Shown here one piece after another: positions 9,524 to 35,609 of a stretch of 64,000 bases of DNA. How positions within the stretch are numbered: the stretch's first letter is position 1; each line of letters begins with the position of its first letter. Location of the stretch: IMG/VR virus record IMGVR_UViG_3300024239_000013, positions 1 to 64,000 of that record. One strand, 5' to 3'. A program made the translations under genes and the position numbers. The notes below the pieces were generated by a model. The model was not told where the DNA came from. It saw only the letters and a program-made list of their open reading frames with translations, and searched no databases.

Positions 9524-10337
9524 CCCCCGGCGCTTAAGCGGTTGGACTCCCGAGGTTATTCCCTGTATACGAGGCCCCCTTAAAAAGACCCGTCTGAGGG
9601 ACCCCTAATATGTCCTTTTTGTCTCCTCCACTAAATATGGGACCCCTGCTTAGCGTATATGTCCCCTACATATACCTCCTATACGAGGGGGCTTCATACC
9701 CCCTATTAGAGGACCCCAATTTTACCCCCCTCCACATATTTGGAGGGCCCCGTTTTTCCGGGGAGATAGAGAAGTATTCAGATCTGTTTTTTATTTTTCG
9801 AAACAGGGTTTACACCTCGGAAAGTATCATATACCCTTACATTGAATCAATGTTATCTTTGTTATCTTAATGTTATCACCTCGGAAACCATCTGTACTCT
9901 AAATGCATAAGCATAGATGCTGAAGCAATGATGACACCTCGGAATGTTTATATAAAGGGGTCGTTACTTAGATGTTGAAGCAATGTTATCACCTCGGAAC
10001 CCTTTCTTTGACAGCATGCTGCATCATATATGACATCAGCAACACCGTCGACCGAGGTGTAATCCTTAGACTAGATGCAAAAGTTTCTTTTATTACCTCT
10101 CACAGATTTAGTCTGTTGCTTACAGAAAAATTCCTTAAGGTACATCAGTTATGACATCGTCACCACCGTCGACCTCGTCGACCGAGGTGTAATCTATAGA
10201 CTAGGTGAAAGATTCTTTCACTCATCTTTAGCTACTTACACAAAAATCCCACCGAGAGCATTGTGCATCAGGGTGGGGATTTCTGGTTGGATAATAATTT
10301 ATTATCCGGTATGTCAAGATTAAAAAGTCCTTTGTGC

Positions 10338-10553
10338 TTATGGTTCAGTGTCCAGATCTGTTAATACCTCGGGTTCAGGTAAGAAGAACATTATAAGAAA
10401 AGCTGTTGCGAGTAGGGTCACTCCTATAAAGAATAACAACTCGTTTAACGGTTCATCATTAAAAGGAATATATTCCTGAACTACTCCTGCCATTGTTAGG
10501 TAGGCTATAAAAAATAAAAGGATCGTTGCGATTAGGTAAAATAACTTTTTCAT
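10338..10553 (-). CDS. Small two-TM membrane protein
   Basis: Two hydrophobic helices; followed by a hairpin terminator near 10245-10283. Confidence 0.7.
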   Translation of the reverse strand: MKKLFYLIATILLFFIAYLTMAGVVQEYIPFNDEPLNELLFFIGVTLLATAFLIMFFLPEPEVLTDLDTEP

Positions 10554-10619
10554 GGTGTTGTGCTGTATTATATTGAGATTTATATTATATATTAAGTATA
10601 TTAAAAAGGTCTATTTTTT

Positions 10620-10850
10620 TTAAATGTCGTTTCCGTTTTCATCGCATAGAACAAATCGACCTTCGATTACTGGAGGGAACTCGGTTGATGGTTCGCCCTC
10701 TGATACGTATTTGAAGTTGGCTTTACCTTTTGATATGATTAAGGTGTTATCAGCAGAAACACTTATAACGATTTTCTTTTCCGAAAGGAGATTGAATAAC
10801 TCTTCGAATTCTTTTGCAATTTTAGATTCTGTCTTTAGTAGCTTTGCCAT
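10620..10850 (-). CDS. Hypothetical early protein
   Basis: Directly downstream of a class I promoter. Confidence 0.75.
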   Translation of the reverse strand: MAKLLKTESKIAKEFEELFNLLSEKKIVISVSADNTLIISKGKANFKYVSEGEPSTEFPPVIEGRFVLCDENGNDI

Positions 10851-10875
10851 GTCTTTGTTTGATTAGTTTGATGAT

Positions 10876-10908
10876 GTAAATGTAAGAAAAATAACCCGGA
10901 TAAAAAAA
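10876..10908 (-). promoter_or_regulatory. Class I (early-type) promoter TTTTTTATC-N13/14-TAnnTTT(A/G); ~28 copies at 10.9-36 kb plus variants near 53.1, 56.4, 57.8 and 61.9 kb
   Basis: Plus-strand text (g/c)taaatgtaag...gataaaaaaa recurs near 10876, 11410, 11859, 12694, 13050, 13742, 14011, 15768, 16301, 16591, 17451, 17986, 19094, 19653, 20152, 20620, 21077, 21741, 22504, 22852, 23651, 25093, 26192, 26737, 30448, 32460, 34988, 35913, almost always just upstream of a minus-strand ATG; -7 box matches Bacteroidota TAnnTTTG. Confidence 0.9.
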
Positions 10909-10947
10909 TAATTTAGCCGGGTTATTTTAACTTCTTTTTTATTCCCC

Positions 10948-11355
10948 TTACCAGGTAACTGGATTAGCTTCAATAAACTCCGGGGTATAAAGGTGTTTTG
11001 AGTTATCGTTATATTTAATTACATCCTCCCACCAGCGGATTCCCATTTCTAATCTAACTATTGCAAATTTTGCAATATCATCACTGTGGACGAAAAAGAA
11101 AATGTCGTTTCTATCTCCTGTATCCGGAATTGGATTTCCCATTTCGTCTAGGTCAGGAAGTGTTTGCACCTCGGTATGGTATTTTATCCTCACCCCCAAT
11201 TCACTCTTAAAGAAAGACTCGAATTCTTCAATTGAACTGTCACCTAATATAACCGCGGGCCAAACGCAAAGTTGTGTGAAGTTGTTGGAGGGTTGAGTTT
11301 CAGTAGATGGTATTACTGGTAAGATTCTTTCGGTTGTTTTTTTAGTTGTTTCCAT
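10948..11355 (-). CDS. Hypothetical early protein
   Basis: 135-aa ORF after a class I promoter. Confidence 0.8.
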   Translation of the reverse strand: METTKKTTERILPVIPSTETQPSNNFTQLCVWPAVILGDSSIEEFESFFKSELGVRIKYHTEVQTLPDLDEMGNPIPDTGDRNDIFFFVHSDDIAKFAIVRLEMGIRWWEDVIKYNDNSKHLYTPEFIEANPVTW

Positions 11356-11617
11356 TTTGTTTGATTTTTTTTGGTTAGTTAATTATAATGTTATATTTAA
11401 TTTGATGACGTAAATGTAAGGAAAATAATCCGGATAAAAAAATAATTAAAGCGTTAATTTTTTTTAATTTTTTTAGTTTTTTTATTTCCATGTAAAATAA
11501 TCCACACACCGTCGTCCCTGGTGGGATCATCATTTTCATTTTTTATGTAAAGGGGAAATTCCATAAAAAAATCCGAGTTACCCCGGATTTCCAATTTTCC
11601 ATTTTCACTAACTAATT

Positions 11618-11815
11618 TTATTTCAAACCAATTCCTTTAAAATTAAAATTCCCTTTTTTGATTTGTTCAACATCGGCTTTGACCGCATCCGCATACCTCG
11701 GGTCTTGGATTTCCTTTTCCTTGCAATCCATGCAAATTATTTGTGTATTGAACATTGACATAATGGTTACACCGTTGGTAGGTTTGCTACATCTTTGACA
11801 GTTTTGTACGTTCAT
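11618..11815 (-). CDS. Small Zn-finger-like protein
   Basis: CQRC...CMDC; class I promoter upstream. Confidence 0.75.
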   Translation of the reverse strand: MNVQNCQRCSKPTNGVTIMSMFNTQIICMDCKEKEIQDPRYADAVKADVEQIKKGNFNFKGIGLK

Positions 11816-12194
11816 GATTTTAAGATTTTGTTTGGTTGGTTGATTAAATTTGATGACGTAAATATAAGGAATCTTTTTAAGATAAAAAAATAATTCATGA
11901 ATTATTTTTGAGATTTTTTGTCCGAGGTGTACGTGTGTTGCTGTGCATGAGACTTCTTCGCAAGAAGTGCAATTAGAACCTGATGTTTACCAACAGGTTC
12001 CGATCAACTACACCGTCGCTTAGTCGTCCAAGGTGTAGCTGATAAAGCACTAGCACTTCTTAGTTATACTGGTATGATTTTTTTTATCTTAACCTATAGC
12101 CAAAAAAAACCCGAAAGATTTAACAATCTTCCGGATCTTCAAACTCAACTTAGAAACCTATAGAAATTTAACCTTCGAACCTATAGAAACCTTG

Positions 12195-12314
12195 TGGACA
12201 GAGCAGGACTCGAACCTGCAATAGTACCATACTTGCTTCGGATGCCTCCTACAACAACGGAATCGAACCGTATCTCTCGATGCCTCGAGCGCTTTACCAC
12301 TTCGCCACCTGTCC
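12195..12314 (-). ncRNA. tRNA-Leu-like RNA, 69-nt insert replacing the anticodon/variable arms
   Basis: Acceptor GGACAGG/TCTGTCC-A, D arm TGGCGAAGTGGTAAAGCGC, T arm GCAGG-TTCGAGT-CCTGC; extra internal ACGG-TTCGATT-CCGT. Confidence 0.75.
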
Positions 12315-12345
12315 TTATTTTATTTTTTTTATATATTTGTTATGA

Positions 12346-12381
12346 CCCTCGCGGGCGGAGTATCTTAGTAACATAGTATGT
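12346..12381. repeat. 36-bp dispersed motif CCCTCGCGGGCGGAGTATCTTAGTAACATAGTATGT (copies 15532-15567, 23918-23953; partial 20206-20227, ~35977-36011, ~37806-37852)
   Basis: First two copies identical; all intergenic and in the same orientation. Confidence 0.85.
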
Positions 12382-12391
12382 TATAGATCCC

Positions 12392-12658
12392 TTAATCCCA
12401 CCAATTATGAGCCCCAATGTTTACTTTTTTAAATCCAACCAGAAGTGAAAATAAATCTGAAGGAATGTTAACGGTAATGTATGATTCATTAGCCACCCTT
12501 TTCGTAAACATCACAACTGGATATGTGTTGAGAATCGTTTCAATTCCTTCCTCGTTAAAAGAACTGAGATTGATGTTTTCCAATGCAATTAAATTTGGGA
12601 GGTCTTTGATATTTATATCAACAGCAACAGTAATGTTGGTAACCATTTCTTTGTTCAT
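12392..12658 (-). CDS. Hypothetical early protein
   Basis: ORF after a class I promoter. Confidence 0.75.
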   Translation of the reverse strand: MNKEMVTNITVAVDINIKDLPNLIALENINLSSFNEEGIETILNTYPVVMFTKRVANESYITVNIPSDLFSLLVGFKKVNIGAHNWWD

Positions 12659-13169
12659 AACGTTTAGTTTTAGTAATTATTATTTTTTGATGATGTAAAT
12701 GTAAGAAAAATAAACGGGATAAAAAAAATAATTAGAGGATTATTTAATTTTTAATGTTTATTTAATTCCTTTTCGATTTCAATAGACATGCTATCTATAA
12801 ACTTTTTAGTTTTCTGATGTTCTATTGTTTCGTTCAGTCTTAAAAGAGATTCCTTTTCTGTGATTCTATTCATTCTGGAATTGTGTTTATTTGATTCGTG
12901 AATGAATGTAAATATCTTTATATCTCAAATCCAACTATTCTTCCAAGTATTAATACTATCGTTACCGCTAGTCCTACTAACACATACAAATATTGTATCT
13001 TTTTTATCATTTTAAATTATATTTAGATTCATTAATTTTATTTGATGACGTAAATGTAAGAAAAGTAAACCAGATAAAAAAATAATTTGATGGTTATTTT
13101 TGGATTTTAACTTTCTTTTATTTCCGAGGTATTTTACCCTAGATAGCTCTAGAATACTTGAGATTAAAA

Positions 13170-13262
13170 AAAACTAACATGGATACCGACATGCTTCCAC
13201 CGTCGACCGTCGACATCAAAACTAACATGGATACCGACATGTTTCCACCGTCGACCTCGGTG
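13170..13262. repeat. 48-bp-period direct duplication containing CACCGTCG sites
   Basis: AAAACTAACATGGATACCGACATG(C/T)TTCCACCGTCGACC twice. Confidence 0.9.
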
Positions 13263-13360
13263 GGCTCGATCTGCTTACTCCTTTTGCTTAGCATCTCACA
13301 CAAAAAAAGAGCCTCACGCTTGCGAGGCCCCTTTCAAACTAATTGTATAACCAAACTAAA

Positions 13361-13702
13361 CTAAACTTCTATTTCAACTTTCCATTCGTTTTTAATTTCA
13401 ATTCTTAGATTGTACATCATTGTAACGTAAAATGGAAGTACTTTTTGATTTATGTGATCTGCTCTTCCCACCGCGGCAGAAAGGTCATTATCCAAAATCG
13501 ATTTTACGAAACTTCCGGGGTATGTGTCGATACCAACCTTATTTAGCATTATGGAAGTTCCTATGTTTATTATATGCTCATTTGCTTCTTCGTTATGAAG
13601 AAATTCAAATGGGATTAAATTCTTATTTGAGTTTAAGTAGTCTTCTACTTGTTTTCTTACTCCTTGTTCTGCGAGTTGTCTGTCAATTTTTTGTGTTTCC
13701 AT
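13361..13702 (-). CDS. Hypothetical early protein
   Basis: ORF after a class I promoter; PGSFV.SIL.NDL..A..RAD motif. Confidence 0.8.
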   Translation of the reverse strand: METQKIDRQLAEQGVRKQVEDYLNSNKNLIPFEFLHNEEANEHIINIGTSIMLNKVGIDTYPGSFVKSILDNDLSAAVGRADHINQKVLPFYVTMMYNLRIEIKNEWKVEIEV

Positions 13703-13774
13703 TTTTGTTTAGTTTTAAGTTATTTGAATAATTTTGATGGTGTAAATGTAAGGAATATTTTCGAGATAAAAAAA

Positions 13775-13993
13775 TTAACTGGATAAATATTCCTGAAATC
13801 TTTCGTTATAATTCGATTTTCCAAACCCCTTGTTATTCTCGTGGCACCATTTTAAGAATGGAACGACTACAGCATATTCTTTAGAGGTTAGATCCTCTTC
13901 GAATAGATATAGAATTTCGTCTGGGTTAAAAGTTCCCTCGATGTTTACTGCTTTACTGATTAAAGTGTAGAGTCTTTGTGAAAGTTGTTTCAT
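13775..13993 (-). CDS. Hypothetical early protein
   Basis: Start re-called to MKQLSQ, downstream of the promoter at ~14011. Confidence 0.75.
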   Translation of the reverse strand: MKQLSQRLYTLISKAVNIEGTFNPDEILYLFEEDLTSKEYAVVVPFLKWCHENNKGFGKSNYNERFQEYLSS

Positions 13994-14086
13994 TTTAGTT
14001 GATTTTATACCACAAATATACAAAATCTCGTTTAGATAAAAAAAAATAATTTTATAATTTAAGATTATAATTTATTTTTATCCCGG

Positions 14087-14176
14087 GGTGTAGCTGATAG
14101 AGATCTCAGAGAAAGAGAATGTGTAATTTCATGTTTTTCTTTAATATAACACTCTGAGCTCTCTATCAACTACACC
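14087..14176. repeat. Long imperfect inverted repeat flanked by CACC sites
   Basis: GGTGTAGCTGATAGAGA..CTCAGAG / CTCTGAG..TCTCTATCAACTACACC; the same arms occur in swapped order near 12003-12043. Confidence 0.8.
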
Positions 14177-14287
14177 GTTGCCCGGGGTGAAAATGAAGTT
14201 AAGAGAGTGCAAAAAAAGGATCCTTCATCTTGAAGGATCCCCACTCTTTCTTTATTGTAAAATTCTTCCGTGATTTTATACGTACAT

Positions 14288-14818
14288 TTACTTTGTACTG
14301 TAAAATATCTTTCTATTGTAATCGAACACCACCTTATGTTCGGAAAAGAAATCTGAACCGAGTATGCCTATGATCTCCACCCCGGATCCGTTTTTAATGG
14401 TGTTGATAACATTTGATAGGTTACTTGCCTTTAAACTTATATTAAATTGCTTATCCTTTATCTTTATAGTTCTTATATTAACCACGTCTTTCATAAAGTT
14501 AGAACCTCCGATCCCAACAAAGTCTGTGTCTGAATCCATTGTGACTAGACCAATCTCCTCGGATCTATTATAGTCAATCACGCTCACATTAGCACCGGTG
14601 TCAAGTAACATATACTCTTTTTTACCTCCTATCTCCACCTCAGCAAATAGAAGATTACTGTCATTTGTTGTTAGATAATGGAAAGCTCCGATCGGCTCAC
14701 CGTCGTAAACTACTTGTTGGCTGTTTCTTAAGTCCTCTATCTTCTTGTTCTGATTGAATATAAACACCGATGATGTTAATAACAAAACACCTAATAGAAT
14801 GTAATAAATCGATTTCAT
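14288..14818 (-). CDS. Retropepsin-like aspartyl protease with N-terminal membrane anchor
   Basis: LLDTGA and GILGSDF motifs; hydrophobic N-terminus. Confidence 0.85.
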   Translation of the reverse strand: MKSIYYILLGVLLLTSSVFIFNQNKKIEDLRNSQQVVYDGEPIGAFHYLTTNDSNLLFAEVEIGGKKEYMLLDTGANVSVIDYNRSEEIGLVTMDSDTDFVGIGGSNFMKDVVNIRTIKIKDKQFNISLKASNLSNVINTIKNGSGVEIIGILGSDFFSEHKVVFDYNRKIFYSTK

Positions 14819-14989
14819 GTTAATTTTTTGTTTTGTTTTTTGTATTTAATTAAATTATTCTAAGGTATCTATCTTCTTTTTACTTTATGTGCAAATATAC
14901 TAAAAAATACCAAGGAAAAAAAATTCTCTGCATTTGAACTTTATTTAGAGTTCCTACCGTGGATATAATTAATCATCCAAATCTCAATT

Positions 14990-15290
14990 CTGTTTTTCCA
15001 ACTGTTTTTCCAACTGTTTTTCCAACTGTCTCTCTTCTGTTTTTTAGTGTCTACACCGTGGGACGAAAAATCACATGACGTTTAAACAATTGCTAATTGC
15101 TTAGTGGTCATCACCTAGCAATTGCATCTACCGTGGGATAGAAATCTCTTAGAAACCACCCAGTATTACTTAAACAATTGCTTAGCAAGATGCTAAGCAT
15201 CACACACACCTCGGAATGTGAACCACCAGCATTTAAACAATTGCTTAGTAGACATCACCTAGCAATTGCACCTACCGTGGGATAGTTATA
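14990..15290. repeat. Non-coding repeat cluster: (CTGTTTTTCCAA)x3, TTAAACAATTGCT x3, CATCACCTAGCAATTGCA.CTACCGTGGGATAG x2
   Basis: Read directly. Confidence 0.85.
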
Positions 15291-15581
15291 AACCTCTTTT
15301 CTGTTGCTACTTTATTGTCAAATCCACCGGACCAATGTTATAAACCTCGGGCTGCCTTTGATTAATAAAATGTCACTCACACACATATTAAAAAATCCCG
15401 ATAATAGATTATCGGGATTGAAGTAGAATTATTCAAGCTCTACTAAAACTAAACTAATGATGTAAACAAACTAATAACTATTTTATAACCAAAGATATTT
15501 ATATTACGTATTATTTTTCTTAGCATATCTGCCCTCGCGGGCGGAGTATCTTAGTAACATAGTATGTATAGGGGTGCTTAA

Positions 15582-15743
15582 TTAATTTAAGCAAACCTTA
15601 GCCCTAATATTACGATTTTCAAGTGTTGCAAAAGCTCTCTCTTCCTTTTCTGCTGCTTTTAAATCCATTTCCAATTTGGCTAGCATTGCCATCATTAAAA
15701 GCATTCCTAAATTTTTTTCGTTGTTGTTTAGTGGTGTTTCCAT
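15582..15743 (-). CDS. 53-aa hypothetical early protein (METPLNNNEK...), missing from the ORF track
   Basis: ATG 15743 to TAA 15582; class I promoter at ~15768. Confidence 0.6.
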   Translation of the reverse strand: METPLNNNEKNLGMLLMMAMLAKLEMDLKAAEKEERAFATLENRNIRAKVCLN

Positions 15744-15800
15744 TTTTTTTCGTTTTTTAATTATGGTGTAAATGTAAGAAAAATAAACCAGATAAAAAAA

Positions 15801-16052
15801 TTATTTAGCTGGTTTGTTTATATTTTTTAACCACCATTCCTTTAATCTACCTAATTCCCTTTCACCCATATTCATTTCCATAAAATCAACTATTCCCTTA
15901 TATTCTCTCTTCTCCTCCTTATAAAAACCTGGGGTGTCAATGTACTCTTCTCCCATTATTTCTCTAATCGAATATTCAGACATGCTGTCTATCTCTACTA
16001 AGAATCTCTCGAAATTCTTTTTGTTTCTAAATGTGGGTTTTTTATCCTTCAT
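15801..16052 (-). CDS. Hypothetical early protein
   Basis: Start re-called to MKDKKP; short overlap with the upstream gene. Confidence 0.7.
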   Translation of the reverse strand: MKDKKPTFRNKKNFERFLVEIDSMSEYSIREIMGEEYIDTPGFYKEEKREYKGIVDFMEMNMGERELGRLKEWWLKNINKPAK

Positions 16053-16257
16053 GGTCGATGTAAATATTATTCTCCTCGTCATCCTTGTCGTCCTCGTCAT
16101 TCAATTCATACTCGTCTAATAAAGCATCCATGGCATCATTTGCATCATCAGCTGATAGCCAGTTCTTAACAAGATAATCAAGGATAGAAGAGTCCTTGAT
16201 ACCCTCCTCTCTTAACTTTTCTAATTTCTCTATTGGTGTTTTGCGGTCTGTAGCCAT
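16042..16257 (-). CDS. Small acidic early protein
   Basis: Class I promoter upstream; D/E-rich tail. Confidence 0.75.
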   Translation of the reverse strand: MATDRKTPIEKLEKLREEGIKDSSILDYLVKNWLSADDANDAMDALLDEYELNDEDDKDDEENNIYIDHEG

Positions 16258-16359
16258 TTTGATTTTTTTAATTGAGTTATTGTTATTTTTTTATTATGAA
16301 GTAAATGTAAGAAAAATCCACCAGATAAAAAAATAATTTGGTCGAATTTTTTTGCTGAA

Positions 16360-16557
16360 TTAACCCTTCACCCTTACAAAGGTTTCACCGCTGTTCTCTG
16401 AATAAATAACTATTAAATAAAGCCCACCATTTTGTCTTGAAACTAAATTTTTAATTTCTATTATGTTGATTTTACCCACCTCAATTTTCTCTAACCATTC
16501 GTTTAATTTAACCTCCATATCGGCTGCGTAGTCGGCATAAAAAATCTTGGTCTTCAT
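16360..16557 (-). CDS. Small hypothetical early protein
   Basis: Class I promoter upstream. Confidence 0.7.
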   Translation of the reverse strand: MKTKIFYADYAADMEVKLNEWLEKIEVGKINIIEIKNLVSRQNGGLYLIVIYSENSGETFVRVKG

Positions 16558-28208: not shown

Positions 28209-28230
28209 TATAAATTGTTTTTTTTTATTC

Positions 28231-28788
28231 TTATTTAATATTATCTATGTATATAATCTCGTCTTTATCACCTCGGTAACTTTCTATTATAAGTTTCCAT
28301 TTACCTTTAAAGATTTTTTTGAAAACCGATTTACCCACTTCGATAACATCATCTTCTTCCCAAAACCCTCGGGTTAAATCACCAATCTCGTATCCTAACC
28401 ATCTATCTCTCCCATGACGTACATCATTAGATTTATCATTTTCATCATAAGGTCTTTTTAGTTCTAATTTAAAAAATTCCAAGTAAATCTCAGGTATTCC
28501 CTTTAAGAAGGATCCAGAAATGCTATTTTTACCAATTTTTTCTAAATCATCTGTAAAATTAAGATCATAACACTTTAAAGACCCGTAATAGTGATCAACA
28601 CCATACGAAGTCACTCTGAGAGTTACTTCACGATATCCATCCCTTCGATAGCCTATCCAACTAATGGCGTCCCTACCTTCGGAGTTTTTTAAATGAAGAT
28701 CTTTCCCAAAATCGTCATTGATTGGAAATTTCCAGAAATTTAAGTCCGCTTTACTTATGTGATTTTCTATATTAAACTCTTTGTTCAT
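28231..28788 (-). CDS. Hypothetical protein
   Basis: 185-aa ORF in operon. Confidence 0.75.
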   Translation of the reverse strand: MNKEFNIENHISKADLNFWKFPINDDFGKDLHLKNSEGRDAISWIGYRRDGYREVTLRVTSYGVDHYYGSLKCYDLNFTDDLEKIGKNSISGSFLKGIPEIYLEFFKLELKRPYDENDKSNDVRHGRDRWLGYEIGDLTRGFWEEDDVIEVGKSVFKKIFKGKWKLIIESYRGDKDEIIYIDNIK

Positions 28789-28799
28789 ATTTAATTGTT

Positions 28800-29648
28800 T
28801 TATAAATTTTCTTCAATCCATTTATTTAAAAATCTCTTTTCTATTAGACCAATAGAATGGATGTCATTATTTTCATTTGACCAATCGTGAGACTCGGATA
28901 CTGCTCGAACTATCAAATCAATAACATCATCTTTACTTTTATAACCTTTAAATTTTTCTAGCATTTCAGCAGTAGTTTTTGATGCTTGTTCATCTAACAG
29001 TCTATCTACTTCTTCTCTGGTATAACTATCTTTTACTTTTTTAATTGTAATAGTGTTGTCTTCCGGATTTACTTTTAATCTTTCAAAATCTAAAGGAGAT
29101 GAATCTCTTAATGATTCATGTAAAGGTTTATTTAAACCTTTTTCATACTCAACCAATACATCAGTAATAATATTACCTTTATTATATTCTTCAACAAATT
29201 TTTGAATAAATTGTTGAGAGGGTTGAGGTAATAATGCTCCATCTAATTTCCATACAGAATTAGGATGTGAATTTTTTCTTGGAAATCTTAAAGAAGTATC
29301 TGTTGTTGCGATGACTTTTTTACAATAATCATCTATGAACTTTAAACCATTATTTTTTAATAATTCAGGTATACCATCTATAATATAATAATCGTCCTCT
29401 TCTATTTTATCATCTGAAATAATATATAAATGTTGGTGTTTAAAGAGTTCTACATTTGGAATGGTGATGGCACATGAATTGTGATTAGATGAGTTATTTA
29501 AAAAAAACCAACCTTCAGTGTATCTTTCAATCTCTATTTTAGATGTCCAAAATAAAGAGGCTGATAAGAGTAATTGATATTCTTTTGTATTTATTACTTT
29601 TTCATTGGTAGGTAACATAACTACTTTTGCTTTTTTAAACGTACTCAT
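28800..29648 (-). CDS. Phage hypothetical protein, paralogue A
   Basis: QHLYIISDDKI, KVIATTD, PQPSQQFI shared with the next gene. Confidence 0.85.
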   Translation of the reverse strand: MSTFKKAKVVMLPTNEKVINTKEYQLLLSASLFWTSKIEIERYTEGWFFLNNSSNHNSCAITIPNVELFKHQHLYIISDDKIEEDDYYIIDGIPELLKNNGLKFIDDYCKKVIATTDTSLRFPRKNSHPNSVWKLDGALLPQPSQQFIQKFVEEYNKGNIITDVLVEYEKGLNKPLHESLRDSSPLDFERLKVNPEDNTITIKKVKDSYTREEVDRLLDEQASKTTAEMLEKFKGYKSKDDVIDLIVRAVSESHDWSNENNDIHSIGLIEKRFLNKWIEENL

Positions 29649-29699
29649 TGTATTTGTTTTTAAAATTATACCTAAAGATAAGGAAAAAAAACTAACATT

Positions 29700-30422
29700 T
29701 TATAGATTTTCTTCAATCCATTTATCTTCTTTTTCTTTAGTAGATTTTATTAAACCGGGATAACCATAATTATCTGATTTATATAATAAAAATGCTTTTC
29801 TACATAAGTCTTCAACTTCTTCTCTTTTCCAACTATCTTTTACTTTTTTAATCGTAATAGTATTGTCTTTTGGATTGATTTTTACTGTATTATTTAAAAC
29901 TTCACATTGTTTTAATCTCGATGCCCAGCTACCTGTTAGTGTAATATTGTCGGAATATTTTGTGCTAAAACCATCTTTTTGTGGGGTAGGATAATTAATA
30001 TACTCAACCATAACATCAGTAATAATATTACCTTTATTATACTCTTCAATAAATTGTTGAATAAATTGTTGAGATGGTTGAGGTATTTCTGTTCTACTTG
30101 TTTGTGATAATTTTTTATCTGTTGTAGCAATAATTTTTTTAAAAGTTTGATTTTCTTTATTTTCTTCTAATACAAAAATTAGTTGTGTTTTTGAATTAAT
30201 TTGTTCTACAATATTTTCTTTATTGTTATAAACCCAATCAAATAATTTTATTTTATCATCTGAAATAATATAAAGATGTTGATATTCTTTATATTCATCA
30301 TTTTTTAATCCATTTAAAATTAGTTTACCTTTTGTTTTTTCAACATCAGAATAAACCATTAAATATTTAGTTTGTTGATTATTAGGTAACATTACCGCTT
30401 TTGCTTTTTTAAACGTACTCAT
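29700..30422 (-). CDS. Phage hypothetical protein, paralogue B
   Basis: Same MSTFKKAK start and KWIEENL end as 28800-29648; start re-called. Confidence 0.85.
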   Translation of the reverse strand: MSTFKKAKAVMLPNNQQTKYLMVYSDVEKTKGKLILNGLKNDEYKEYQHLYIISDDKIKLFDWVYNNKENIVEQINSKTQLIFVLEENKENQTFKKIIATTDKKLSQTSRTEIPQPSQQFIQQFIEEYNKGNIITDVMVEYINYPTPQKDGFSTKYSDNITLTGSWASRLKQCEVLNNTVKINPKDNTITIKKVKDSWKREEVEDLCRKAFLLYKSDNYGYPGLIKSTKEKEDKWIEENL

Positions 30423-30543
30423 TGTATTTGTTTTTAAAATTTGCATTACAAATATAAAAAAAAAATCGCAGGATAAAAAAATAATACCGTGAATATTCCC
30501 TTATCCTGCGATTTTCCCCTTATTAAAGGAGAATTTGTCAATA

Positions 30544-30852
30544 TTATTTTCTCACTCTGTCTCCCACTGCATCATAGATTTGTAATCTAGATATCGAATC
30601 ACTTTTAACATTTAGACTATCAAGGATTTCTGGGGTTAGCCTACTGTCCGGATTATTATAAAGGTATCTCTTAACCTCGATTGCTAGTGAAGCAGAGCCC
30701 AATTCAGTTGCAACTATCAACGACTCTCTTCTTAGTTCTTTTGAACTTAATTCTTTAACCTCTATACCGTCACTTTCCTTGGTGTCGGAGCAGCTACCTA
30801 ATCCGATTAGTAAAGACAAAATAACAAACCCTAATAAAATTTTATTTCCCAT
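30544..30852 (-). CDS. Putative lipoprotein
   Basis: Signal peptide with LGSC lipobox. Confidence 0.65.
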   Translation of the reverse strand: MGNKILLGFVILSLLIGLGSCSDTKESDGIEVKELSSKELRRESLIVATELGSASLAIEVKRYLYNNPDSRLTPEILDSLNVKSDSISRLQIYDAVGDRVRK

Positions 30853-30921
30853 TTTTTTTAAAATTAATTTTTTTTTCATTCTTTTGAATTCAGCTTACAA
30901 ATTTTCTCAATCAGTTCTCTG

Positions 30922-31245
30922 TTATCGATTCTCAATTGAGCGATTTTTTTTATTTAGATTCCTTATCACAGATTCTTTCTCTTTTATCACAGCTTCTTTT
31001 TCCTTCCACTTAGCACTCTCTTTAATCTGACGATTGACTTCATTTTGAATGGTAAGTGGTCTCTTCTTTTCATACCTCTCTATGAACTTTTTCATCTTAA
31101 GAATCTCGTTGTTGAGATAATCTATCTCTGATTGCAACTTACCGTTCTCAATTTCTAACGATTTGCATCTAGTTTCCAAAGCAGCAAAGATCTCATCTTT
31201 ACCGTATTTTCTTCTTAGTTTTAGTAAAACCTCATCGTCACTCAT
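30922..31245 (-). CDS. Coiled-coil hypothetical protein
   Basis: Heptad-rich ORF overlapping the upstream gene by 4 nt. Confidence 0.7.
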   Translation of the reverse strand: MSDDEVLLKLRRKYGKDEIFAALETRCKSLEIENGKLQSEIDYLNNEILKMKKFIERYEKKRPLTIQNEVNRQIKESAKWKEKEAVIKEKESVIRNLNKKNRSIENR

Positions 31246-31511
31246 AACACCTCGGCTTCTTTTAACTGTTCGTAGACATTGAGCACCTTGTGGTGGTCAG
31301 AGTTTTCTATTTCGTTGATAAGAGTTTCTATCACCGAGGATCCTAGATCATTTTCAACGTCCTCCTTCCTACGGTGTTTACCCTGAATTATGAATGATAG
31401 AGTGGTTAAAGCATCACAGTCCGAAGATGCTATGAATTCACATATCTTCTTTCTCATTCTGTGACCTTCGACCATCTTGGTCTGGTTGAGATAAAGACTA
31501 TTTACTCCCAT
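31242..31511 (-). CDS. Hypothetical protein
   Basis: Operon member. Confidence 0.65.
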   Translation of the reverse strand: MGVNSLYLNQTKMVEGHRMRKKICEFIASSDCDALTTLSFIIQGKHRRKEDVENDLGSSVIETLINEIENSDHHKVLNVYEQLKEAEVL

Positions 31512-31734
31512 TGATCAGCAGTAAATAAACTATAATTACTAAAACTGATCCCATCCAGCTTTTTAGAGAAGGTTCCACGTCGAATCCGATTAGCATTAAT
31601 CCAGCTACCAGAAGCATTGGCAACCCTACAAAAAAAAGCAACGAAAACATAGCCAGAAAAATTAAAGCTGATGTTCCCATAGATTGGAGATCCCCCCTTG
31701 ATAGTTTTCTAAAAAATTCTCTTACTCTTTCCAT
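31498..31734 (-). CDS. Small membrane protein
   Basis: Two hydrophobic segments. Confidence 0.7.
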   Translation of the reverse strand: MERVREFFRKLSRGDLQSMGTSALIFLAMFSLLFFVGLPMLLVAGLMLIGFDVEPSLKSWMGSVLVIIVYLLLINGSK

Positions 31735-31805
31735 ATTAATGTACCTGATTTATTTTTTTTTATTTTTATTATCTATTATATAATTTTTCTTTCCGTTTTT
31801 CTTTT

Positions 31806-32054
31806 TTAGATTTCCCACGGTTGTTTATCGCCGATACCTCTTTGCCACTTAATCTCGTTGTTAACCAAGATCCCGACAATTTCACCGTTGGTGGTAGGTT
31901 TAAGTGCAATGCTTTTAACATAACTACCTGGTTTCTTAACTTTATCGTAGATAAACCTTTTCCCATTTTCGTAAACCACAGTGACCTCATAGCCTCCTGG
32001 TTGTAGACTCAGTTCATTTGTTCTGTAATCATCAGATACCCTTAGATCGCTCAT
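31806..32054 (-). CDS. Hypothetical protein
   Basis: TN.LSL.PGG..V.V.Y..G....YD.VK.P..Y motif. Confidence 0.75.
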   Translation of the reverse strand: MSDLRVSDDYRTNELSLQPGGYEVTVVYENGKRFIYDKVKKPGSYVKSIALKPTTNGEIVGILVNNEIKWQRGIGDKQPWEI

Positions 32055-32095
32055 AATGAATTATTTTTTTTATTAAATTTTTTTTTATTTTGAGT

Positions 32096-32434
32096 TTATG
32101 TAGAAAATATATCCAGATCCGGGTTAGGTATAAGTCTCCAGCTTTTCTCTACCCCAGGTCCTCTTGCTAGACTAACCGTAATAGCCTCTTCCTTTAGCTT
32201 ATTCAAAGCTTCTATATAATCCCCTTTTTTATATAGTTCTTGTATCCCCTTTGCAGTAGTCCCGTTGATGTCTGCCATATAAACAACAGCGTGTCTGGTT
32301 CTATTTGCATTTGCTCTTAGCACCATCATGGAGAGTTCCTTTTCATCAAACTTGGGTTCTCCAGTTTCCACATTATATGGTGCAACTCTAAAAGACTCTA
32401 AACCATATGCGTCTGCTATTCCGTAAACTTTCAT
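32096..32434 (-). CDS. Hypothetical early protein
   Basis: GIAD.YGLESF...RA.AN..RHA...W..IPNP.LD; class I promoter. Confidence 0.8.
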   Translation of the reverse strand: MKVYGIADAYGLESFRVAPYNVETGEPKFDEKELSMMVLRANANRTRHAVVYMADINGTTAKGIQELYKKGDYIEALNKLKEEAITVSLARGPGVEKSWRLIPNPDLDIFST

Positions 32435-32842
32435 AAAATTTCTTTTTGGTTTTAATGACGTAAATGTAAGAATAAAGATCGAGATAAAAAAATTATTTTA
32501 CAATATAAAAAAAAAGGAGGAACTCAAGTAATGAATCCACTCCTATTTAGAAATTGGGCATATAATTTTTTTTATACCCTCTATATATTCTCATTCCTAT
32601 ACTTTTTTTGTAACGAAAGTAAATATTCCCAGGTTAATTTCCTGCTGCCATCAACTGAATTAACTGCATCATATTCATCCTTAGTTGGGTCTTTTATCTC
32701 TCCAAATTTCCAGCTTATGATAAGGTCCAATATAATGCTGGATTTAGTAATGCTTATGTGAAGTTGTCTATTCGACCGATTTATCCTTCTAACCTCTTCT
32801 CCTCCTAGCCTATCAGTTTCCTTTCTGATGATCCATTGCTTC

Positions 32843-33049
32843 TTAAGCCTCCTCGCCTTCTTCTTTATCCAGTTTATCATTGGCATTGTAGAATTTGATT
32901 CTGGATTCAATATCACCGGGGTTTATGCGAATCCCTATAGATTCCAGGTTCTTTACAACCTTGTCGGAATCCACTTCACCGTTGTTTTCTTCTGCAAATC
33001 TTTTTATCTCTTTATAGATAAGATCAGATTTGAATTCGTGTGATTTCAT
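32843..33049 (-). CDS. Small hypothetical protein
   Basis: ATG-started ORF with protein-like composition. Confidence 0.6.
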   Translation of the reverse strand: MKSHEFKSDLIYKEIKRFAEENNGEVDSDKVVKNLESIGIRINPGDIESRIKFYNANDKLDKEEGEEA

Positions 33050-33094
33050 ATTAGATTTTTAATAATAATTATATTATGATTTTTTTTAATCTGC

Positions 33095-33364
33095 TTAACC
33101 ATTATCCGAAGATTCCTGTTTGGCTAAAAGACTTATGCAATGTAGAATAATCCTTTGTTTGTCCTCTAGATTAATCTTACTTGAATCCAATTCTTTCTTA
33201 GCAGCCATAACTTGTAAATAAACTCCTCTTGCTAGTTTTTCAACCTCCTTTCTGTAGGTGACTAGTAGTTCGCTTGTCTTAGCATCCATGCTTAATTCTA
33301 TAATATTTTTTTTTATTAGTGTTTTAATTTCCCGTTCGATAGTTTGATAACACATTTCCAACAC
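33095..33364 (-). CDS. Hypothetical protein (true start probably MDAKT)
   Basis: Operon member. Confidence 0.55.
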   Translation of the reverse strand: MLEMCYQTIEREIKTLIKKNIIELSMDAKTSELLVTYRKEVEKLARGVYLQVMAAKKELDSSKINLEDKQRIILHCISLLAKQESSDNG

Positions 33365-33482
33365 GTAACTGCTGTTGCTTGGTAATCAACCTTATCAACT
33401 GGTTCCCCACATAGTTTACAATTTAATCTCTTAAATGTTTTTTGAATTCTGGATTTAATTTTATCCTTTAATTTAGCCATGA

Positions 33483-33797
33483 TTAGTATCCCATTTCAAT
33501 TTTAACTGAAGGATCCGGTTTTATCTCGTGTCCGGGAATGTTTCTTTTAACATAATCTGCTAGGAATTGACATCTCTCATACTCCTCATTGATTATGAAA
33601 AGACTTGTCATTCTATCTATAGCCTTACATACTGAATCCAGATCAACATCAACTATTGCTGAATCTCCTTTCGATACCAACATATCGTAAGCCATATAAC
33701 ATCCATCAACAAACTCTTTTCTTGATATCTCTTTTAGCTTCTCCTGAATTTCTTTTGAGTGTGCTTCAAACTCTTCGTCGTCAAAGTCTTCGTGCAT
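33483..33797 (-). CDS. Hypothetical protein with UVR-like EEYERC motif
   Basis: F...EEYERC..L. Confidence 0.7.
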   Translation of the reverse strand: MHEDFDDEEFEAHSKEIQEKLKEISRKEFVDGCYMAYDMLVSKGDSAIVDVDLDSVCKAIDRMTSLFIINEEYERCQFLADYVKRNIPGHEIKPDPSVKIEMGY

Positions 33798-33801
33798 AAC
33801 G

Positions 33802-34023
33802 TTATTCTATTATATGTGCTGTTTTACTTAATCCTGTTTCTTTAACCTCTCTGTATAAAGTACTGCCTTCTGAAATGATTTCCATTTCTCCCTCAAATTC
33901 GCTACTGGTGTCTCTTCTGATTTTCTCCCTAATGATAACACCGCCGGCGAGATATACCTTGTTCTGTATATCGTAATGCTTAGCCTTGTTATCCGTGGTA
34001 CATATAAATTTTACCGCTGCCAT
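33802..34023 (-). CDS. Small hypothetical protein
   Basis: Class II promoter at 34051-34080. Confidence 0.7.
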   Translation of the reverse strand: MAAVKFICTTDNKAKHYDIQNKVYLAGGVIIREKIRRDTSSEFEGEMEIISEGSTLYREVKETGLSKTAHIIE

Positions 34024-34332
34024 TTTTATGGTTTTATTTTAGATTTATATATTATAGTGAAAATCCAGACAAAGATTTCAGACAAATTGGTGGTAGGCTT
34101 TACTTCATATTAAGCTTTCACCCCGGGAGTTTTTCTTTTTTCATCCAGCCAATTTTTAAACATGGCTCTTTCCTCCTCGTTCATTTCATTGTGGAATTTT
34201 TCAAATTCTCCAGCTGCTTCCTTAAAATCTTGAATCAATTGTTCAATGCTTCTTGTTGTTCTCATAATCTTTTATTTTAAATTGTTAAATGTATTAATAT
34301 TCTTTTTTTCCTTCCTTTCCTTCCCTTAATTA

Positions 34333-34965
34333 CTATACATACTCGTATTTTTTTTCAGCGGTCCCATTGTACTTAAGCCCATTCTCATAGAATTCCATTT
34401 CGTTCTCAGAGATTCTAATTTCCATTTCAGCATCTGAAAAATAATCACTATAAGATCTTTCTATTCTGTTTTTTATTTCTTCTACGTGGGTTTTGAATTT
34501 TTCCTCTGCGTTTTTAACTAGGACTTTAACGTAGTTGTACCTTGGATCAGATTCTAAAAATTCATTATCAATTGTAAGTGTCGTTGAAGTATAATGGCTT
34601 TCATGAAAACTAAAGCTAATGTACTTCTGGTATTTTTTCGGAAAGCCAAGCCATTCGAGAAACATTTCTTCGTTGGTTATCTCTAGGGCTTCCTTAATAT
34701 TAATTGTTCCAAATTCTCCTTCATACTCCAGTCCCTTTCTGTGGTTTTTGAAAACGAAATTGTCATGGTTCTTTTCATAATAATCCTCTCCGAATAACTC
34801 CGCCATTTCTTTGTGTTGGGGTTCGAATAATGCGCAGTCATCAATTGCCCAGTCATAAGCCTCGTCGGAATTTGTGTGCTTTAGTCTTTCCCTCATTTTT
34901 TCGATAGCAACTTTTTTTGCTTCTTCTGAAAGTTCGTTGAATTGGTAAATGTTTATTGTTCTCAT
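34333..34965 (-). CDS. Conserved phage hypothetical protein
   Basis: Y.F.ELSEEAK..AIE N-terminus and N..EF.ENG C-terminus; class I promoter. Confidence 0.8.
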   Translation of the reverse strand: MRTINIYQFNELSEEAKKVAIEKMRERLKHTNSDEAYDWAIDDCALFEPQHKEMAELFGEDYYEKNHDNFVFKNHRKGLEYEGEFGTINIKEALEITNEEMFLEWLGFPKKYQKYISFSFHESHYTSTTLTIDNEFLESDPRYNYVKVLVKNAEEKFKTHVEEIKNRIERSYSDYFSDAEMEIRISENEMEFYENGLKYNGTAEKKYEYV

Positions 34966-35049
34966 TGTTGTCCTATTTTTGATGAGGTAAAATTACAAAA
35001 TCTTATTTAGATAAAAAAATAATTTACAAATTTTTTTAAGAAAAATAAT

Positions 35050-35529
35050 TTAATCTCGAATATTTTCCAACCTCACACTTTCGTTGATTCTTGTATTCAG
35101 CTCTCCAACCTTTAAATTAATCCAGTTGTCAACCCTGGCAGTTATTTCATTTTTAACCAATTCCAGGTCTATATCCACTTTCACATCAAACCCAAAGGAG
35201 ATTTCAATGTTTTCCGAAAATATCCATGTTTTATTACTATTCGGTTTGTAGTTCAATTTTTCAGGTTCGTCAAAGTATTCTATGTAGATTGCGGTTTTCT
35301 CTGCCACTTGGTCGAGTATACTCATACCCAAAGAATTTTTCAAAAAAGCTTTTATTGTTTCAGTTCTACTTATCTCTGCGAGAAACTTGCACACAAAAAG
35401 CTTATCCCTCGACAACTTTTCGGAAGGGAATAAAAATGAATATCTAACATCAATTTCGACATTCTCTAAACCAAGAGATTCCACCTCGGAAATGAATTCT
35501 TCTATCAATCTATCTAACATTTTACACAC
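35050..35529 (-). CDS. Hypothetical protein
   Basis: 159-aa ORF. Confidence 0.7.
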   Translation of the reverse strand: MCKMLDRLIEEFISEVESLGLENVEIDVRYSFLFPSEKLSRDKLFVCKFLAEISRTETIKAFLKNSLGMSILDQVAEKTAIYIEYFDEPEKLNYKPNSNKTWIFSENIEISFGFDVKVDIDLELVKNEITARVDNWINLKVGELNTRINESVRLENIRD

Positions 35530-35609
35530 ATATGAGACTATTATAAACGTGGGTTAAAAAAATGCAATTTCCCAAAAAGCATTTGTGTCTAATGGGTAAC
35601 ACCTCGGAT

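What the first reader, a model, noticed from the sequence alone, without database searches (positions are those of the whole stretch)
9813..35607. A 17-bp palindrome CACCnnnG-n-CnnnGGTG and its half-site CACCTCGG saturate only the 9.8-35.6 kb module
Seen: 22 exact CACCTCGG/CCGAGGTG copies (9813, 9877, 9935, 9990, 10052, 10182, 11167, 11922, 15207, 16864, 17545, 19197, 19206, 21830, 21926, 22749, 23411, 26978, 28269, 31248, 35482, 35600), and none noticed elsewhere in the window. A rough estimate at ~30% GC expects fewer than one. Nine full 17-mers lie in spacers between transcription units, one inside a perfect 33-bp palindrome. Half-sites also persist inside coding sequence and are densest at the left boundary. 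Inference: binding sites for a dimeric protein that marks a DNA domain (parS-like loading, protection, ejection or packaging) rather than simple operators. It does not match canonical parS.
Basis: partly seen in the sequence, partly recalled or inferred. Interest (0 to 1): 0.7.

Follow-up and report, generated by a model that had tools for sequence, protein, structure and literature searches.

The report
Oriented motif marking phage early genes
A short DNA word, present singly on the coding strand of genes and as back-to-back pairs in the gaps between them, saturates only the early-gene block of an uncultivated giant phage and its relatives; it is clearly kept by selection, but what reads it is still unknown.

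Summary
All 22 CACCTCGG/CCGAGGTG copies of the 319-kb genome lie in 9813-35607, where shuffles expect 0.37. The word belongs to a wider family, C[CAG][AG][AC]GGTG on the coding strand, with 56 copies in the module and 5 elsewhere. Two copies head to head form the 17-bp dyad: 7 exact and 2 near-exact, all between transcription units.

The genome is a jumbo phage with Bacteroidota-type promoters, and the module looks like its early region. It holds about 27 small transcription units, each with a conserved promoter and a hairpin terminator.

- In-gene copies are 30-fold enriched over a codon-preserving null and are all on the sense strand. They flip with the one inverted gene.
- A 93%-identical relative shows 1 change in 120 motif positions against a 6.5% background.
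- Related phages have the same architecture (terminator, 17-46 nt, dyad, 54-190 nt, promoter). Their dyads differ symmetrically in the outer bases: CACC..GGTG, AACC..GGTT, GAAC..GTTC.

The dyads are not hairpin-driven, so they best fit a dimeric, phage-specific DNA-binding factor. The strict co-orientation with transcription argues against parS, packaging or ejection roles. It points to a transcription-polar or RNA-level function. The reader protein was not identified.

The parts
9813..35607 (-). Motif-bearing module: about 27 small transcription units, nearly all on the - strand (putative early region)
   Evidence: All 22 exact copies and 56 of 61 family copies of the genome lie here. There are 27 distinct composite promoters on the - strand. 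The block is syntenic in G001, G002 and G004.
9813..9997 (-). Distal boundary array: four co-oriented single sites (9813, 9877, 9935, 9990), 55-64 bp apart
   Evidence: The last site, (T/C)CCGAGGTG, aligns positionally in W, G1 and G2, about 50 nt before a conserved GC-rich element.
10043..10059 (.). 17-bp dyad CACCGTCG-A-CCGAGGTG
   Evidence: Part of a 130-bp direct repeat with 10164-10189 (families D12 and D20).
10164..10189 (.). Expanded dyad: two inverted half-sites with 10 nt between them
11507..11523 (.). 17-bp dyad
   Evidence: It lies 88 nt before the -7 box of the next promoter.
13246..13262 (.). 17-bp dyad, with a further single site at 13198
14173..14189 (.). 17-bp dyad, 21 nt behind the T-run of terminator 14216-14242
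17536..17552 (.). 17-bp dyad followed directly by a T-run
19189..19221 (.). 17-bp dyad (19197-19213) inside a 16+1+16 perfect inverted repeat
   Evidence: It is the only dyad with a significantly stable fold (z = -5.7). It lies behind terminator 19260-19288.
19788..19804 (.). 17-bp dyad
   Evidence: It is tandemly duplicated (88 bp) in the 93%-identical relative L037.
21830..21942 (.). Two near-dyads (CACCTCGGCCCACGGTA) in a 96-bp tandem repeat
11167..35489 (-). Single sites inside - strand genes, all on the sense strand
   Evidence: Sites start at 11167, 11770, 13469, 14378, 14698, 16726, 16864, 16972, 18188, 18467, 20426, 20800, 22749, 23411, 24495, 28269, 31248, 31332, 31883, 32914, 32977, 33939, 34119 and 35482. 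Enrichment: 27 observed against 0.86 expected.
26892..27471 (+). Four single sites on the + strand inside the only + strand gene of the module (CHAP-domain gene 26833-27630)
   Evidence: Sites at 26892, 26978, 27105 and 27464, all sense for that gene.
10876..35020 (-). Companion element: 27 copies of the module promoter box. The -7 element is TAnnTTT(A/G), with TTTTTTTATC upstream.
   Evidence: The -7 consensus of Bacteroidetes sigma-A is TAnnTTTG (PMC7366714).

Best explanation
Element. The unit is an oriented 8-bp recognition element, 5'-C[CAG][AG][AC]GGTG-3' on the coding strand. It is specific to the roughly 26-kb early-gene block of a jumbo phage with Bacteroidota-type promoters. Two units head to head with one base between them make the 17-bp dyad.

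Proposed mechanism. A phage-lineage-specific, dimeric, sequence-specific DNA-binding protein occupies the dyads. These are high-affinity sites in the untranscribed gaps, just behind each intrinsic terminator and ahead of the next early promoter. There it acts as a boundary, roadblock or timed repressor of early transcription units. A multi-site complex forms at the distal end of the block (9813-10189). The many single half-sites inside genes are weaker sites of the same protein. They are kept only in the orientation in which RNA polymerase meets the bound protein from its permissive side, so the interaction with transcription is polar.

Shown: the motif family, its restriction to the module, enrichment over a codon-aware null, purifying selection, sense-strand rule, junction architecture, conservation, and symmetric change in relatives.

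Inferred: the protein, duplex binding, and the polar effect on transcription.
For: Dyad properties.
- Spacing is fixed in all 31 dyads of three genomes, with G8 and C10 invariant. The two halves are drawn from the same variant set without being kept complementary: at pair 7:11 only 7 of 31 are Watson-Crick.
- Six of 7 dyads do not fold better than shuffles.
- Outer bases change on both halves together between lineages. W, G001 and G002 have CACC..GGTG. G003 has AACC..GGTT. G004 has GAAC/AACC..GTTC.
- Each variant is enriched only in that genome's own module. This suggests a co-evolving, phage-encoded reader.

Position.
- The position is constant in four genomes: 17-46 nt after a terminator T-run and 54-190 nt before the next -7 box.
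- Arrays with about 55-75 bp spacing at the distal end of the block occur in W and G002, and a dyad-plus-site pair in G001. Dyad-bearing segments are tandemly duplicated.

Selection.
- 1 difference in 120 motif positions against 6.5% background in a 93%-identical relative, P = 0.003.

Polarity.
- 27 sense and 0 antisense in genes, against 0.86 and 0.56 expected.
- Sites in inverted genes follow those genes in 9 of 12 cases across three genomes.
Against: - No reader protein was identified. Pfam and PHROG give nothing for the small conserved proteins. The AlphaFold model of the best positional candidate (19339-19617) is unusable, with pLDDT 53.
- A duplex-binding dimer does not by itself predict strictly sense-oriented single sites. 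The 'permissive orientation' idea is an added assumption with no direct precedent in phages.
- It also does not explain why in-gene sites are positively selected rather than merely tolerated.
- In G004 the sense-strand 3' half is invariant and the 5' half is degenerate. The oriented half, not the dyad, may therefore be the functional core.
- Contigs from RNA libraries cover two dyad-bearing spacers, so the dyads may be transcribed. DNA carry-over cannot be excluded.
Confidence: 0.4

Rival explanations
1. RNA-level or non-template-strand tag. The 8-mer is read as CNNNGGUG in early transcripts, or on the displaced non-template strand, by an RNA-binding protein or endoribonuclease. That factor marks early messages for timed decay, translational control or factor loading. 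The logic is that of T4 RegB/GGAG or of RfaH/ops. Dyads would be the same signal made readable in both directions.
For: This rival most directly explains three results:
- The strict sense-strand rule (27:0).
- Flipping with inverted genes.
- Even scatter of sites within genes.

Further support:
- Solitary sites show no flanking conservation.
- Selection acts at synonymous positions: ACC GAG GTG-type codons in a 31% GC genome.
- The sense 3' half of G004 dyads is invariant.
- RNA-library contigs span dyads 11507 and 13246.
Against: - Dyads lie behind intrinsic terminators and upstream of promoters, where little RNA is expected.
- A single-strand reader gives no reason for an exact head-to-head geometry with one base between, in more than 50 sites of five genomes.
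- No RegB, RegA or NusG-like gene was found. The RegB and RegA searches had no positive control.
- ops-like signals sit once per operon in leaders, and these do not.
Confidence: 0.3
2. Structural hairpin element. The dyads would be small stem-loops (CACCG/CGGTG stem) acting as auxiliary terminators, RNase III-type processing sites or REP-like elements.
For: - The outer 5 positions are complementary in 24 of 31 dyads.
- Outer-base changes between lineages keep complementarity.
- Two G003 dyads have a T:G pair that is valid only on the sense strand.
- Two W dyads are followed by T-runs.
- One dyad is a 33-bp perfect palindrome.
Against: - Six of 7 dyads do not fold better than shuffles.
- Inner positions are not kept complementary, and there is no G:U over A:C preference for either strand.
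- G004 left halves mostly break pairing.
- About 50 solitary half-sites cannot form the hairpin, yet they are selected.
Confidence: 0.08
3. Domain marking for DNA handling: a parS-like centromere, a packaging or ejection-stop signal, or Chi/KOPS-like polar guide sequences.
For: - The motif is restricted to one block of about 8% of the genome, with a dense array at one boundary.
- 8-mers with strand polarity recall Chi and KOPS.
- A KaiC/DnaB-like ATPase is encoded in the block.
Against: - No ParB_N domain is found and there is no parS-like sequence.
- Polarity follows gene orientation, not DNA-wide polarity. Four of the 9 opposite-strand sites of W lie in the single inverted 0.8-kb gene.
- The inversion is shared by all relatives while the sites are not positionally conserved, so the sites arose after the inversion.
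- No terminal repeat is detected in this record.
- In G001 and G002 the block is not at the record ends, although those coordinates may be arbitrary.
Confidence: 0.05
4. Promoter or pause element for the phage-encoded sigma factor (6573-7490), read on the non-template strand like the 8-nt Bacteroidetes -7 element.
For: - The element is oriented, 8 nt long and sense-directed.
- The sigma gene adjoins the block in all four genomes.
- Bacteroidetes promoters depend mainly on a single -7 element (PMC7366714).
Against: - The motif is virtually absent from the other 293 kb, where middle and late promoters should be (5 copies).
- Most in-gene copies would start useless truncated transcripts.
- This idea gives no reason for the dyad geometry.
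Confidence: 0.05

Closest known systems
Dyad-symmetric operators of phage repressors and regulators (lambda/P22-type)
   Same: - A 17-bp dyad with fixed spacing.
- Half-site variants of graded match.
- Lineage-specific specificity changes on both halves.
- Multiple sites and arrays.
   Different: - Sites do not overlap promoters; they lie 54-190 bp upstream, just behind terminators.
- There are dozens of sites rather than a few.
- There are many solitary, strictly sense-oriented half-sites inside genes.
- No cognate protein has been identified.
T4 RegB endoribonuclease and its GGAG targets in early mRNAs (from my own knowledge)
   Same: - A short sense-strand word concentrated in early transcripts.
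- A possible means of timed shut-off of early expression.
   Different: - The word is 8 nt rather than 4.
- Sites are not tied to ribosome-binding sites.
- It has a dyad form in gaps that are apparently not transcribed.
- No RegB homologue was found (without a positive control).
Polar over-represented octamers (Chi for RecBCD/AddAB, KOPS for FtsK; from my own knowledge)
   Same: - An 8-bp, strand-specific word that is strongly over-represented.
- It tolerates coding sequence through synonymous choices.
   Different: - It is restricted to 8% of the genome rather than spread genome-wide.
- Polarity follows individual gene orientation rather than replichore or DNA-end polarity.
Polar DNA-bound transcription or replication barriers (Tus-Ter, mTERF, Reb1/TTF-I; from my own knowledge)
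   Same: - Orientation-dependent behaviour towards a tracking polymerase.
- Placement at the ends of transcription units.
   Different: - Those systems use a few sites and have no enriched 'permissive' sites inside genes.
- None is known from phage early regions.
- The polar effect here is only inferred.
parS/ParB centromeres
   Same: Palindromic sites clustered in one chromosomal domain, some inside genes.
   Different: - No ParB is encoded.
- The sequence is unrelated.
- parS sites show no co-orientation with transcription.
RfaH/ops and other NusG-paralogue recruitment signals
   Same: Read on the non-template strand, so sense-specific. The CGGTG core loosely resembles the CGGTAG core of ops (from my own knowledge; a lead only).
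   Different: - ops occurs once per operon, in the leader.
- No NusG-like gene is present in the phage.
- The CCGAGGTG variant lacks the CGGT core.

Membership tests
parS/ParB partition site | A ParB (ParB_N domain) protein encoded by the replicon | tested here: not met
   PF02195 search of the whole 319-kb genome gave no match at E <= 0.1. The control genomes rang in 11 of 14.
parS/ParB partition site | Sequence related to the 16-bp parS consensus TGTTNCACGTGAAACA | tested here: not met
   One match with 3 mismatches at 45504, outside the module. Shuffles expect 1.79.
Dyad-symmetric protein operator | Fixed half-site spacing, with the two halves independent of base-pairing | tested here: met
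   All 31 dyads have 17-bp geometry. Inner pairs are mostly not complementary. Six of 7 have no excess folding energy.
Dyad-symmetric protein operator | Symmetric change of both halves when specificity changes between lineages | tested here: met
   CACC..GGTG in W, G001 and G002. AACC..GGTT in G003. GAAC..GTTC in G004, whose left half is often degenerate.
Dyad-symmetric protein operator | An identified cognate DNA-binding protein | tested here: inconclusive
   No family hits for the conserved small proteins. The AlphaFold model of 19339-19617 has pLDDT 53. HTH protein 52521-53102 is absent from G001.
Dyad-symmetric protein operator | Overlap with, or close proximity to, the core promoter | tested here: not met
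   Dyads end 54-190 nt upstream of the -7 box.
Intrinsic terminator / REP-like hairpin | Stable stem-loop kept by complementary arms | tested here: not met
   z-scores are -0.5, -0.3, +0.1, -1.1, +0.2, -5.7 and -1.9. At pair 7:11 only 7 of 31 are Watson-Crick.
Chi/KOPS-type polar guide sequences | Polarity set by DNA-wide direction, independent of gene orientation | tested here: not met
   Sites flip in inverted genes: W 4:0, G001 3:2, G002 2:1, sense to antisense.
Chi/KOPS-type polar guide sequences | Distribution over the whole replicon | tested here: not met
   56 copies in 26.5 kb against 5 in 293 kb.
RegB-like early-mRNA tag | Motif restricted to the sense strand of early transcripts | tested here: met
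   27 sense and 0 antisense in genes. 'Early' is inferred from the promoter type.
RegB-like early-mRNA tag | A cognate endoribonuclease encoded by the phage | tested here: inconclusive
   PF10715 gave no match, but no control genome rang either.
RegB-like early-mRNA tag | RNA ends at the motif | not testable with these tools
   Only assembled contigs of RNA libraries were available. There are no raw stranded reads and no end mapping.
RfaH/ops-type recruitment signal | A specialised NusG paralogue, with the signal in the operon leader | tested here: not met
   No PF02357 match in the phage. No site lies in the 40-60 nt leaders. The host genome is unknown.

The most novel reading that the evidence does not exclude
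The 8-mer is a transcription-polar tag of a kind not yet described. A phage-encoded factor would read it on the duplex, on the non-template strand or in the RNA, only in the direction of early transcription. It would use it to time, insulate or shut off the whole early regulon. The head-to-head dyads would be the bidirectional form that seals each transcription unit. The tag and its reader would co-evolve between phage lineages (CACC, AACC and GAAC variants).
Probability: 0.3. Interest if true: 0.8.

Novelty: new variant of a known kind. Interest (0 to 1): 0.62.

Why it matters
Giant phages of Bacteroidota are abundant in gut, wastewater and aquatic samples but are almost wholly uncultivated, and nothing is known about how they time their gene expression. 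This analysis gives a sequence-level handle on that question.

It yields a defined early-gene block with about 27 promoters and terminators. It also yields a second, independent cis-code that is under demonstrable selection, is strictly co-oriented with transcription, and changes in step between lineages.

If the reader protein is found, it would define a new regulator-and-site pair with a tunable specificity. It could also mark early regions in metagenomic phage genomes by sequence alone. In addition, the finding shows that a codon-aware null combined with orientation analysis can separate DNA-polarity signals from transcription-polarity signals in uncultivated viruses.

Tried and rejected
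Database and literature searches that found nothing:
- Near-identity search of the phage collection: no match.
- Full-text literature search for the six 8-mers: nothing relevant.
- Rfam at gathering and at E-value thresholds: no family at the dyads, only a tRNA-like hit.

Explanations rejected:
- Shine-Dalgarno role. Only 31248 sits next to a start codon; other contexts are heterogeneous, and the CRACGGTG variants lack the complementarity.
- Extended palindromes as the conserved feature. Only 19197 extends beyond the 17-mer.
- Avoidance of the motif outside the module. There are 5 copies against 6-10 expected.
- Preferred position of in-gene sites within genes. They are evenly spread.
- Flanking conservation around solitary sites. 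None was found.
- Terminal redundancy. No end repeats are present in the record.

Search for the reader protein:
- ParB, NusG, RegB and RegA domain searches were all negative.
- The protein atlas gave no usable hit for 19339-19617.
- The AlphaFold model of 19339-19617 is low-confidence (pLDDT 53), so no fold search was run.
- A wider search for relatives, meant to correlate dyad variant with protein content, yielded only one further record.

RNA evidence:
- Contigs from RNA libraries cover some spacers and genes. They cannot show transcript ends or exclude DNA carry-over.

Full report
**Observation**

CACCTCGG/CCGAGGTG occurs 22 times in the window, at exactly the coordinates given. Dinucleotide shuffles give a mean of 0.37 and a maximum of 2. 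The window is the first 64 kb of a single 319,334-bp, 31.4% GC contig. That whole genome also holds exactly 22 copies, all between 9813 and 35607. The pattern CACCNNNGNCNNNGGTG has 7 exact matches, with 0.00 expected, and 9 with one mismatch. The site at 19189-19221 is a perfect 16+1+16 inverted repeat.

**What the genome is**

- Pfam and PHROG hits include a sigma-70-family factor (6573-7490), a GT2 glycosyltransferase, a tandem array of LRR paralogues (38.6-50.8 kb), a CHAP-domain protein and a KaiC/DnaB-like ATPase.
- Distant tblastn relatives are Tenacibaculum jumbo phages and Lak phages.
- The record is a virus record from a subsurface metagenome. Relatives that are 90-95% identical occur in wastewater, gut, salt-marsh and freshwater runs.
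- The region 10-36 kb consists of small, mostly family-less ORFs on the - strand.
- An unbiased k-mer contrast of module against the rest of the genome found the motif and also a second module-specific element. This is a roughly 45-nt promoter box, present in 10 near-identical and about 17 diverged copies, all on the - strand, 40-60 nt before start codons.
- Its downstream element is TAnnTTT(A/G). This matches the -7 consensus TAnnTTTG of Bacteroidetes sigma-A (PMC7366714).
- Many units end in hairpin plus T-run terminators.
- I infer that the module is the early region, transcribed by a Bacteroidota host polymerase. This was not shown directly.

**The motif is broader and oriented**

- The enriched family is C[CAG][AG][AC]GGTG. 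Counts in the module against the rest of the genome are: CCGAGGTG 22 and 0, CAACGGTG 10 and 0, CGACGGTG 9 and 2, CCGGGGTG 4 and 1, CCCCGGTG 4 and 1.
- In total there are 56 family copies in the module and 5 outside. Between 6 and 10 are expected outside, so the motif is not avoided elsewhere.
- Outside the dyads, the GGTG form lies overwhelmingly on the coding strand.
- In 47 module genes the family occurs 27 times in sense and 0 times in antisense orientation.
- Permuting synonymous codons, which keeps protein sequences and module codon usage, expects 0.86 sense and 0.56 antisense copies. None of 2000 permutations reached the observed value.
- In-gene copies use codons ending in C or G (for example ACC GAG GTG and xxC AAC GGT G) in an AT-rich genome. 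They occupy two reading frames and are evenly spread along genes.
- The one + strand gene of the module (CHAP, 26833-27630) carries four copies, all on its own sense strand.
- That inversion is shared by all relatives, while the sites are not positionally conserved.
- Across W, G001 and G002, sites in inverted genes are sense in 9 of 12 cases.
- Polarity therefore follows transcription, not a DNA-wide direction.

**Selection**

Two metagenome contigs (L036 and L037) are about 93% identical to 15.3-21.5 kb of the window. All 12-13 motif sites are retained in them. There is 1 difference in 120 motif positions against 354 in 5477 elsewhere (P = 0.003). That single difference turns CAACGGTG into CGACGGTG, which is another family member.

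**Relatives**

The module is syntenic in four IMG/VR records.

| Record | Size | Dyad form | Distribution |
|---|---|---|---|
| G001 | 373 kb | same as W (CACC..GGTG) | 8 dyads, all in 296-306 kb; 32 of 35 CRACGGTG copies in its 27-kb module |
| G002 | 430 kb | same as W | 16 dyads in 134-136 kb and 158-170 kb |
| G004 | 348 kb | RAMCGYTG-T-CAACGTTCC | no CACC..GGTG dyads; about 25 copies of its own variant in its module against 3-4 elsewhere |
| G003 | fragment | AAC(C/T)GYTG-Y-CAACGGTT | enriched at its module |

G004 is as close to W in protein identity as G001 is. The inner CG-YY-G-N-C-RR-CG is shared by all lineages. The outer bases change on both halves together.

**Architecture**

In all four genomes the order on the coding strand is:
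1. gene;
2. intrinsic terminator (hairpin followed by a T-run, often TTTTTTGTGG);
3. 17-46 nt;
4. dyad;
5. 54-190 nt;
6. promoter, then the next gene.

Dyads occur only in the long junctions of the distal half of the module. The compact junctions of 20-36 kb fuse the terminator T-run with the promoter's upstream element and have no dyad. At the distal end there is an array: an expanded dyad, a dyad and four single sites, 55-64 bp apart. The last single site aligns positionally in W, G001 and G002, just before a conserved GC-rich element of about 270 nt.

**Hairpin or protein site?**

- The two halves of a dyad are drawn from the same set of variants but are not kept complementary. At pair 7:11 there are 7 Watson-Crick, 6 G:U, 8 A:C and 10 other combinations. 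There is no strand preference for wobble pairs.
- Only the 19197 dyad folds better than shuffles (z = -5.7). The other six have z between -1.9 and +0.2.
- Palindromic extension beyond the 17-mer is not general.
- This favours recognition of sequence by a symmetric dimer on duplex DNA over a structural hairpin.
- A short CACCG/CGGTG stem cannot be fully excluded.

**Mechanism**

No single known system accounts for both facts, namely exact dyad geometry in gaps that are apparently untranscribed and strictly sense-oriented, selected single sites in genes.

- Best explanation (0.4). A phage-lineage-specific dimeric DNA-binding factor occupies dyads as boundary or roadblock elements, or as timed repressor sites of early units. 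It also occupies single half-sites, only in the orientation compatible with transcription. The protein and the polar effect are inferred.
- Main rival (0.3). The 8-mer is read in the transcript or on the non-template strand, in the manner of RegB or ops. This explains the polarity best but not the dyad geometry or its position.
- parS-like, packaging, ejection or Chi/KOPS-like roles are disfavoured. There is no ParB and no parS-like sequence. Polarity flips with gene orientation. No end repeats were found.
- A promoter role for the phage sigma factor is unlikely, because the motif is missing from the other 293 kb.

**Reader protein**

The reader protein was not identified.
- Six proteins are shared only by the three genomes with the CACC-type motif: 13361-13702, 18020-18322 (DUF4313), 19339-19617 (basic, 92 aa), 20364-20597, 26224-26691 and 33316-33480 (zinc ribbon).
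- For 19339-19617, homologues exist only in similar phage contigs, and the AlphaFold model is unusable.

**Verdict**

This is a real, selected, conserved and apparently undescribed cis-code of a jumbo-phage early region. The literature search was negative. Its class, a phage regulatory site set, is known. Its combination of transcription-polar single sites with terminator-adjacent dyads is not.

Noticed in passing
window 10876-35020 (- strand): About 27 copies of a roughly 45-nt promoter box (AATTATTTTTTTATC, about 13 nt, CTTACATTTAC, then TCATCAAA). Ten copies are near-identical, and the exact 11-mer occurs nowhere else in the genome. The -7 part fits the Bacteroidetes TAnnTTTG type. Strain-to-strain deletions of 0.3-1.2 kb have their end points in these boxes (joints 11896>13089 and 12727>13111), which suggests cassette gain and loss by recombination between promoters.
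   Followed up: partly
window 12346-12381, 15532-15567, 20192-20227, 23918-23953, 35976-36011, 37821-37858: A second repeat of 36 nt (two copies are 100% identical) lies just downstream of genes or upstream of the next unit. On the coding strand it reads ACATACTATGTT.CTAAGATACT..GC..GCG.GGG. Similar elements sit in G004 spacers about 40 nt after its dyads. It may be a second promoter class or another protein site.
   Followed up: no
window 12195-12314 (- strand): A tRNA-like gene (Rfam tRNA, 37 bits against a gathering score of 29) with a roughly 50-nt insertion in the variable region and a short anticodon loop. ARAGORN does not call it. Contigs from two RNA libraries cover it.
   Followed up: partly
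window 9500-9775: A GC-rich noncoding element of about 270 nt, made of GGGG(T/A)CCC and CCCCCTCGTATAGG-like blocks, in a 31% GC genome. It is conserved in W, G001, G002 and G004 directly after the last motif site of the module. There is no Rfam match. The consensus fold has 35 pairs but almost no covariation among four sequences. One RNA-library contig covers 9554-9812.
   Followed up: partly
window 37053-38111: At the other edge of the module, AGACTAAG-type tandem repeats and 30-nt arms that are 84-90% complementary (37071-37206 against 38002-38111) flank about 0.9 kb of 43% GC sequence. This may be an invertible or hairpin-forming segment.
   Followed up: no
window 38629-50802 (+ strand): A tandem array of at least 12 paralogous leucine-rich-repeat genes (231-320 aa each), head to tail with 15-20 nt spacers. 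G004 has only 3-4 copies.
   Followed up: no
window 28800-29648 and 29700-30446: Two adjacent paralogous genes (282 and 248 aa; DNA segments 82-89% identical), indicating a recent tandem duplication inside the module. Neither carries a motif site.
   Followed up: no
window 14288-14818 (- strand): A 176-aa protein with a retropepsin-like aspartyl protease domain (Asp_protease_2, E = 2e-10) among the putative early genes.
   Followed up: no
window 9500-15400; runs X5-X18: Relatives 90-95% identical to this subsurface phage occur in wastewater (assembler word depth about 700), animal gut, salt-marsh and freshwater metagenomes. This is an unusually wide distribution for one jumbo-phage lineage.
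   Followed up: partly
L017-L034 (G004) 72-97 kb; L007 (G003) 11.5-16.2 kb: Sister phages carry different versions of the dyad at the same junction position (GAACGYTG-T-CAACGTTCC and AACCGTTG-T-CAACGGTT). In G004 the dyad is strongly oriented, with an invariant 3' half.
   Followed up: yes
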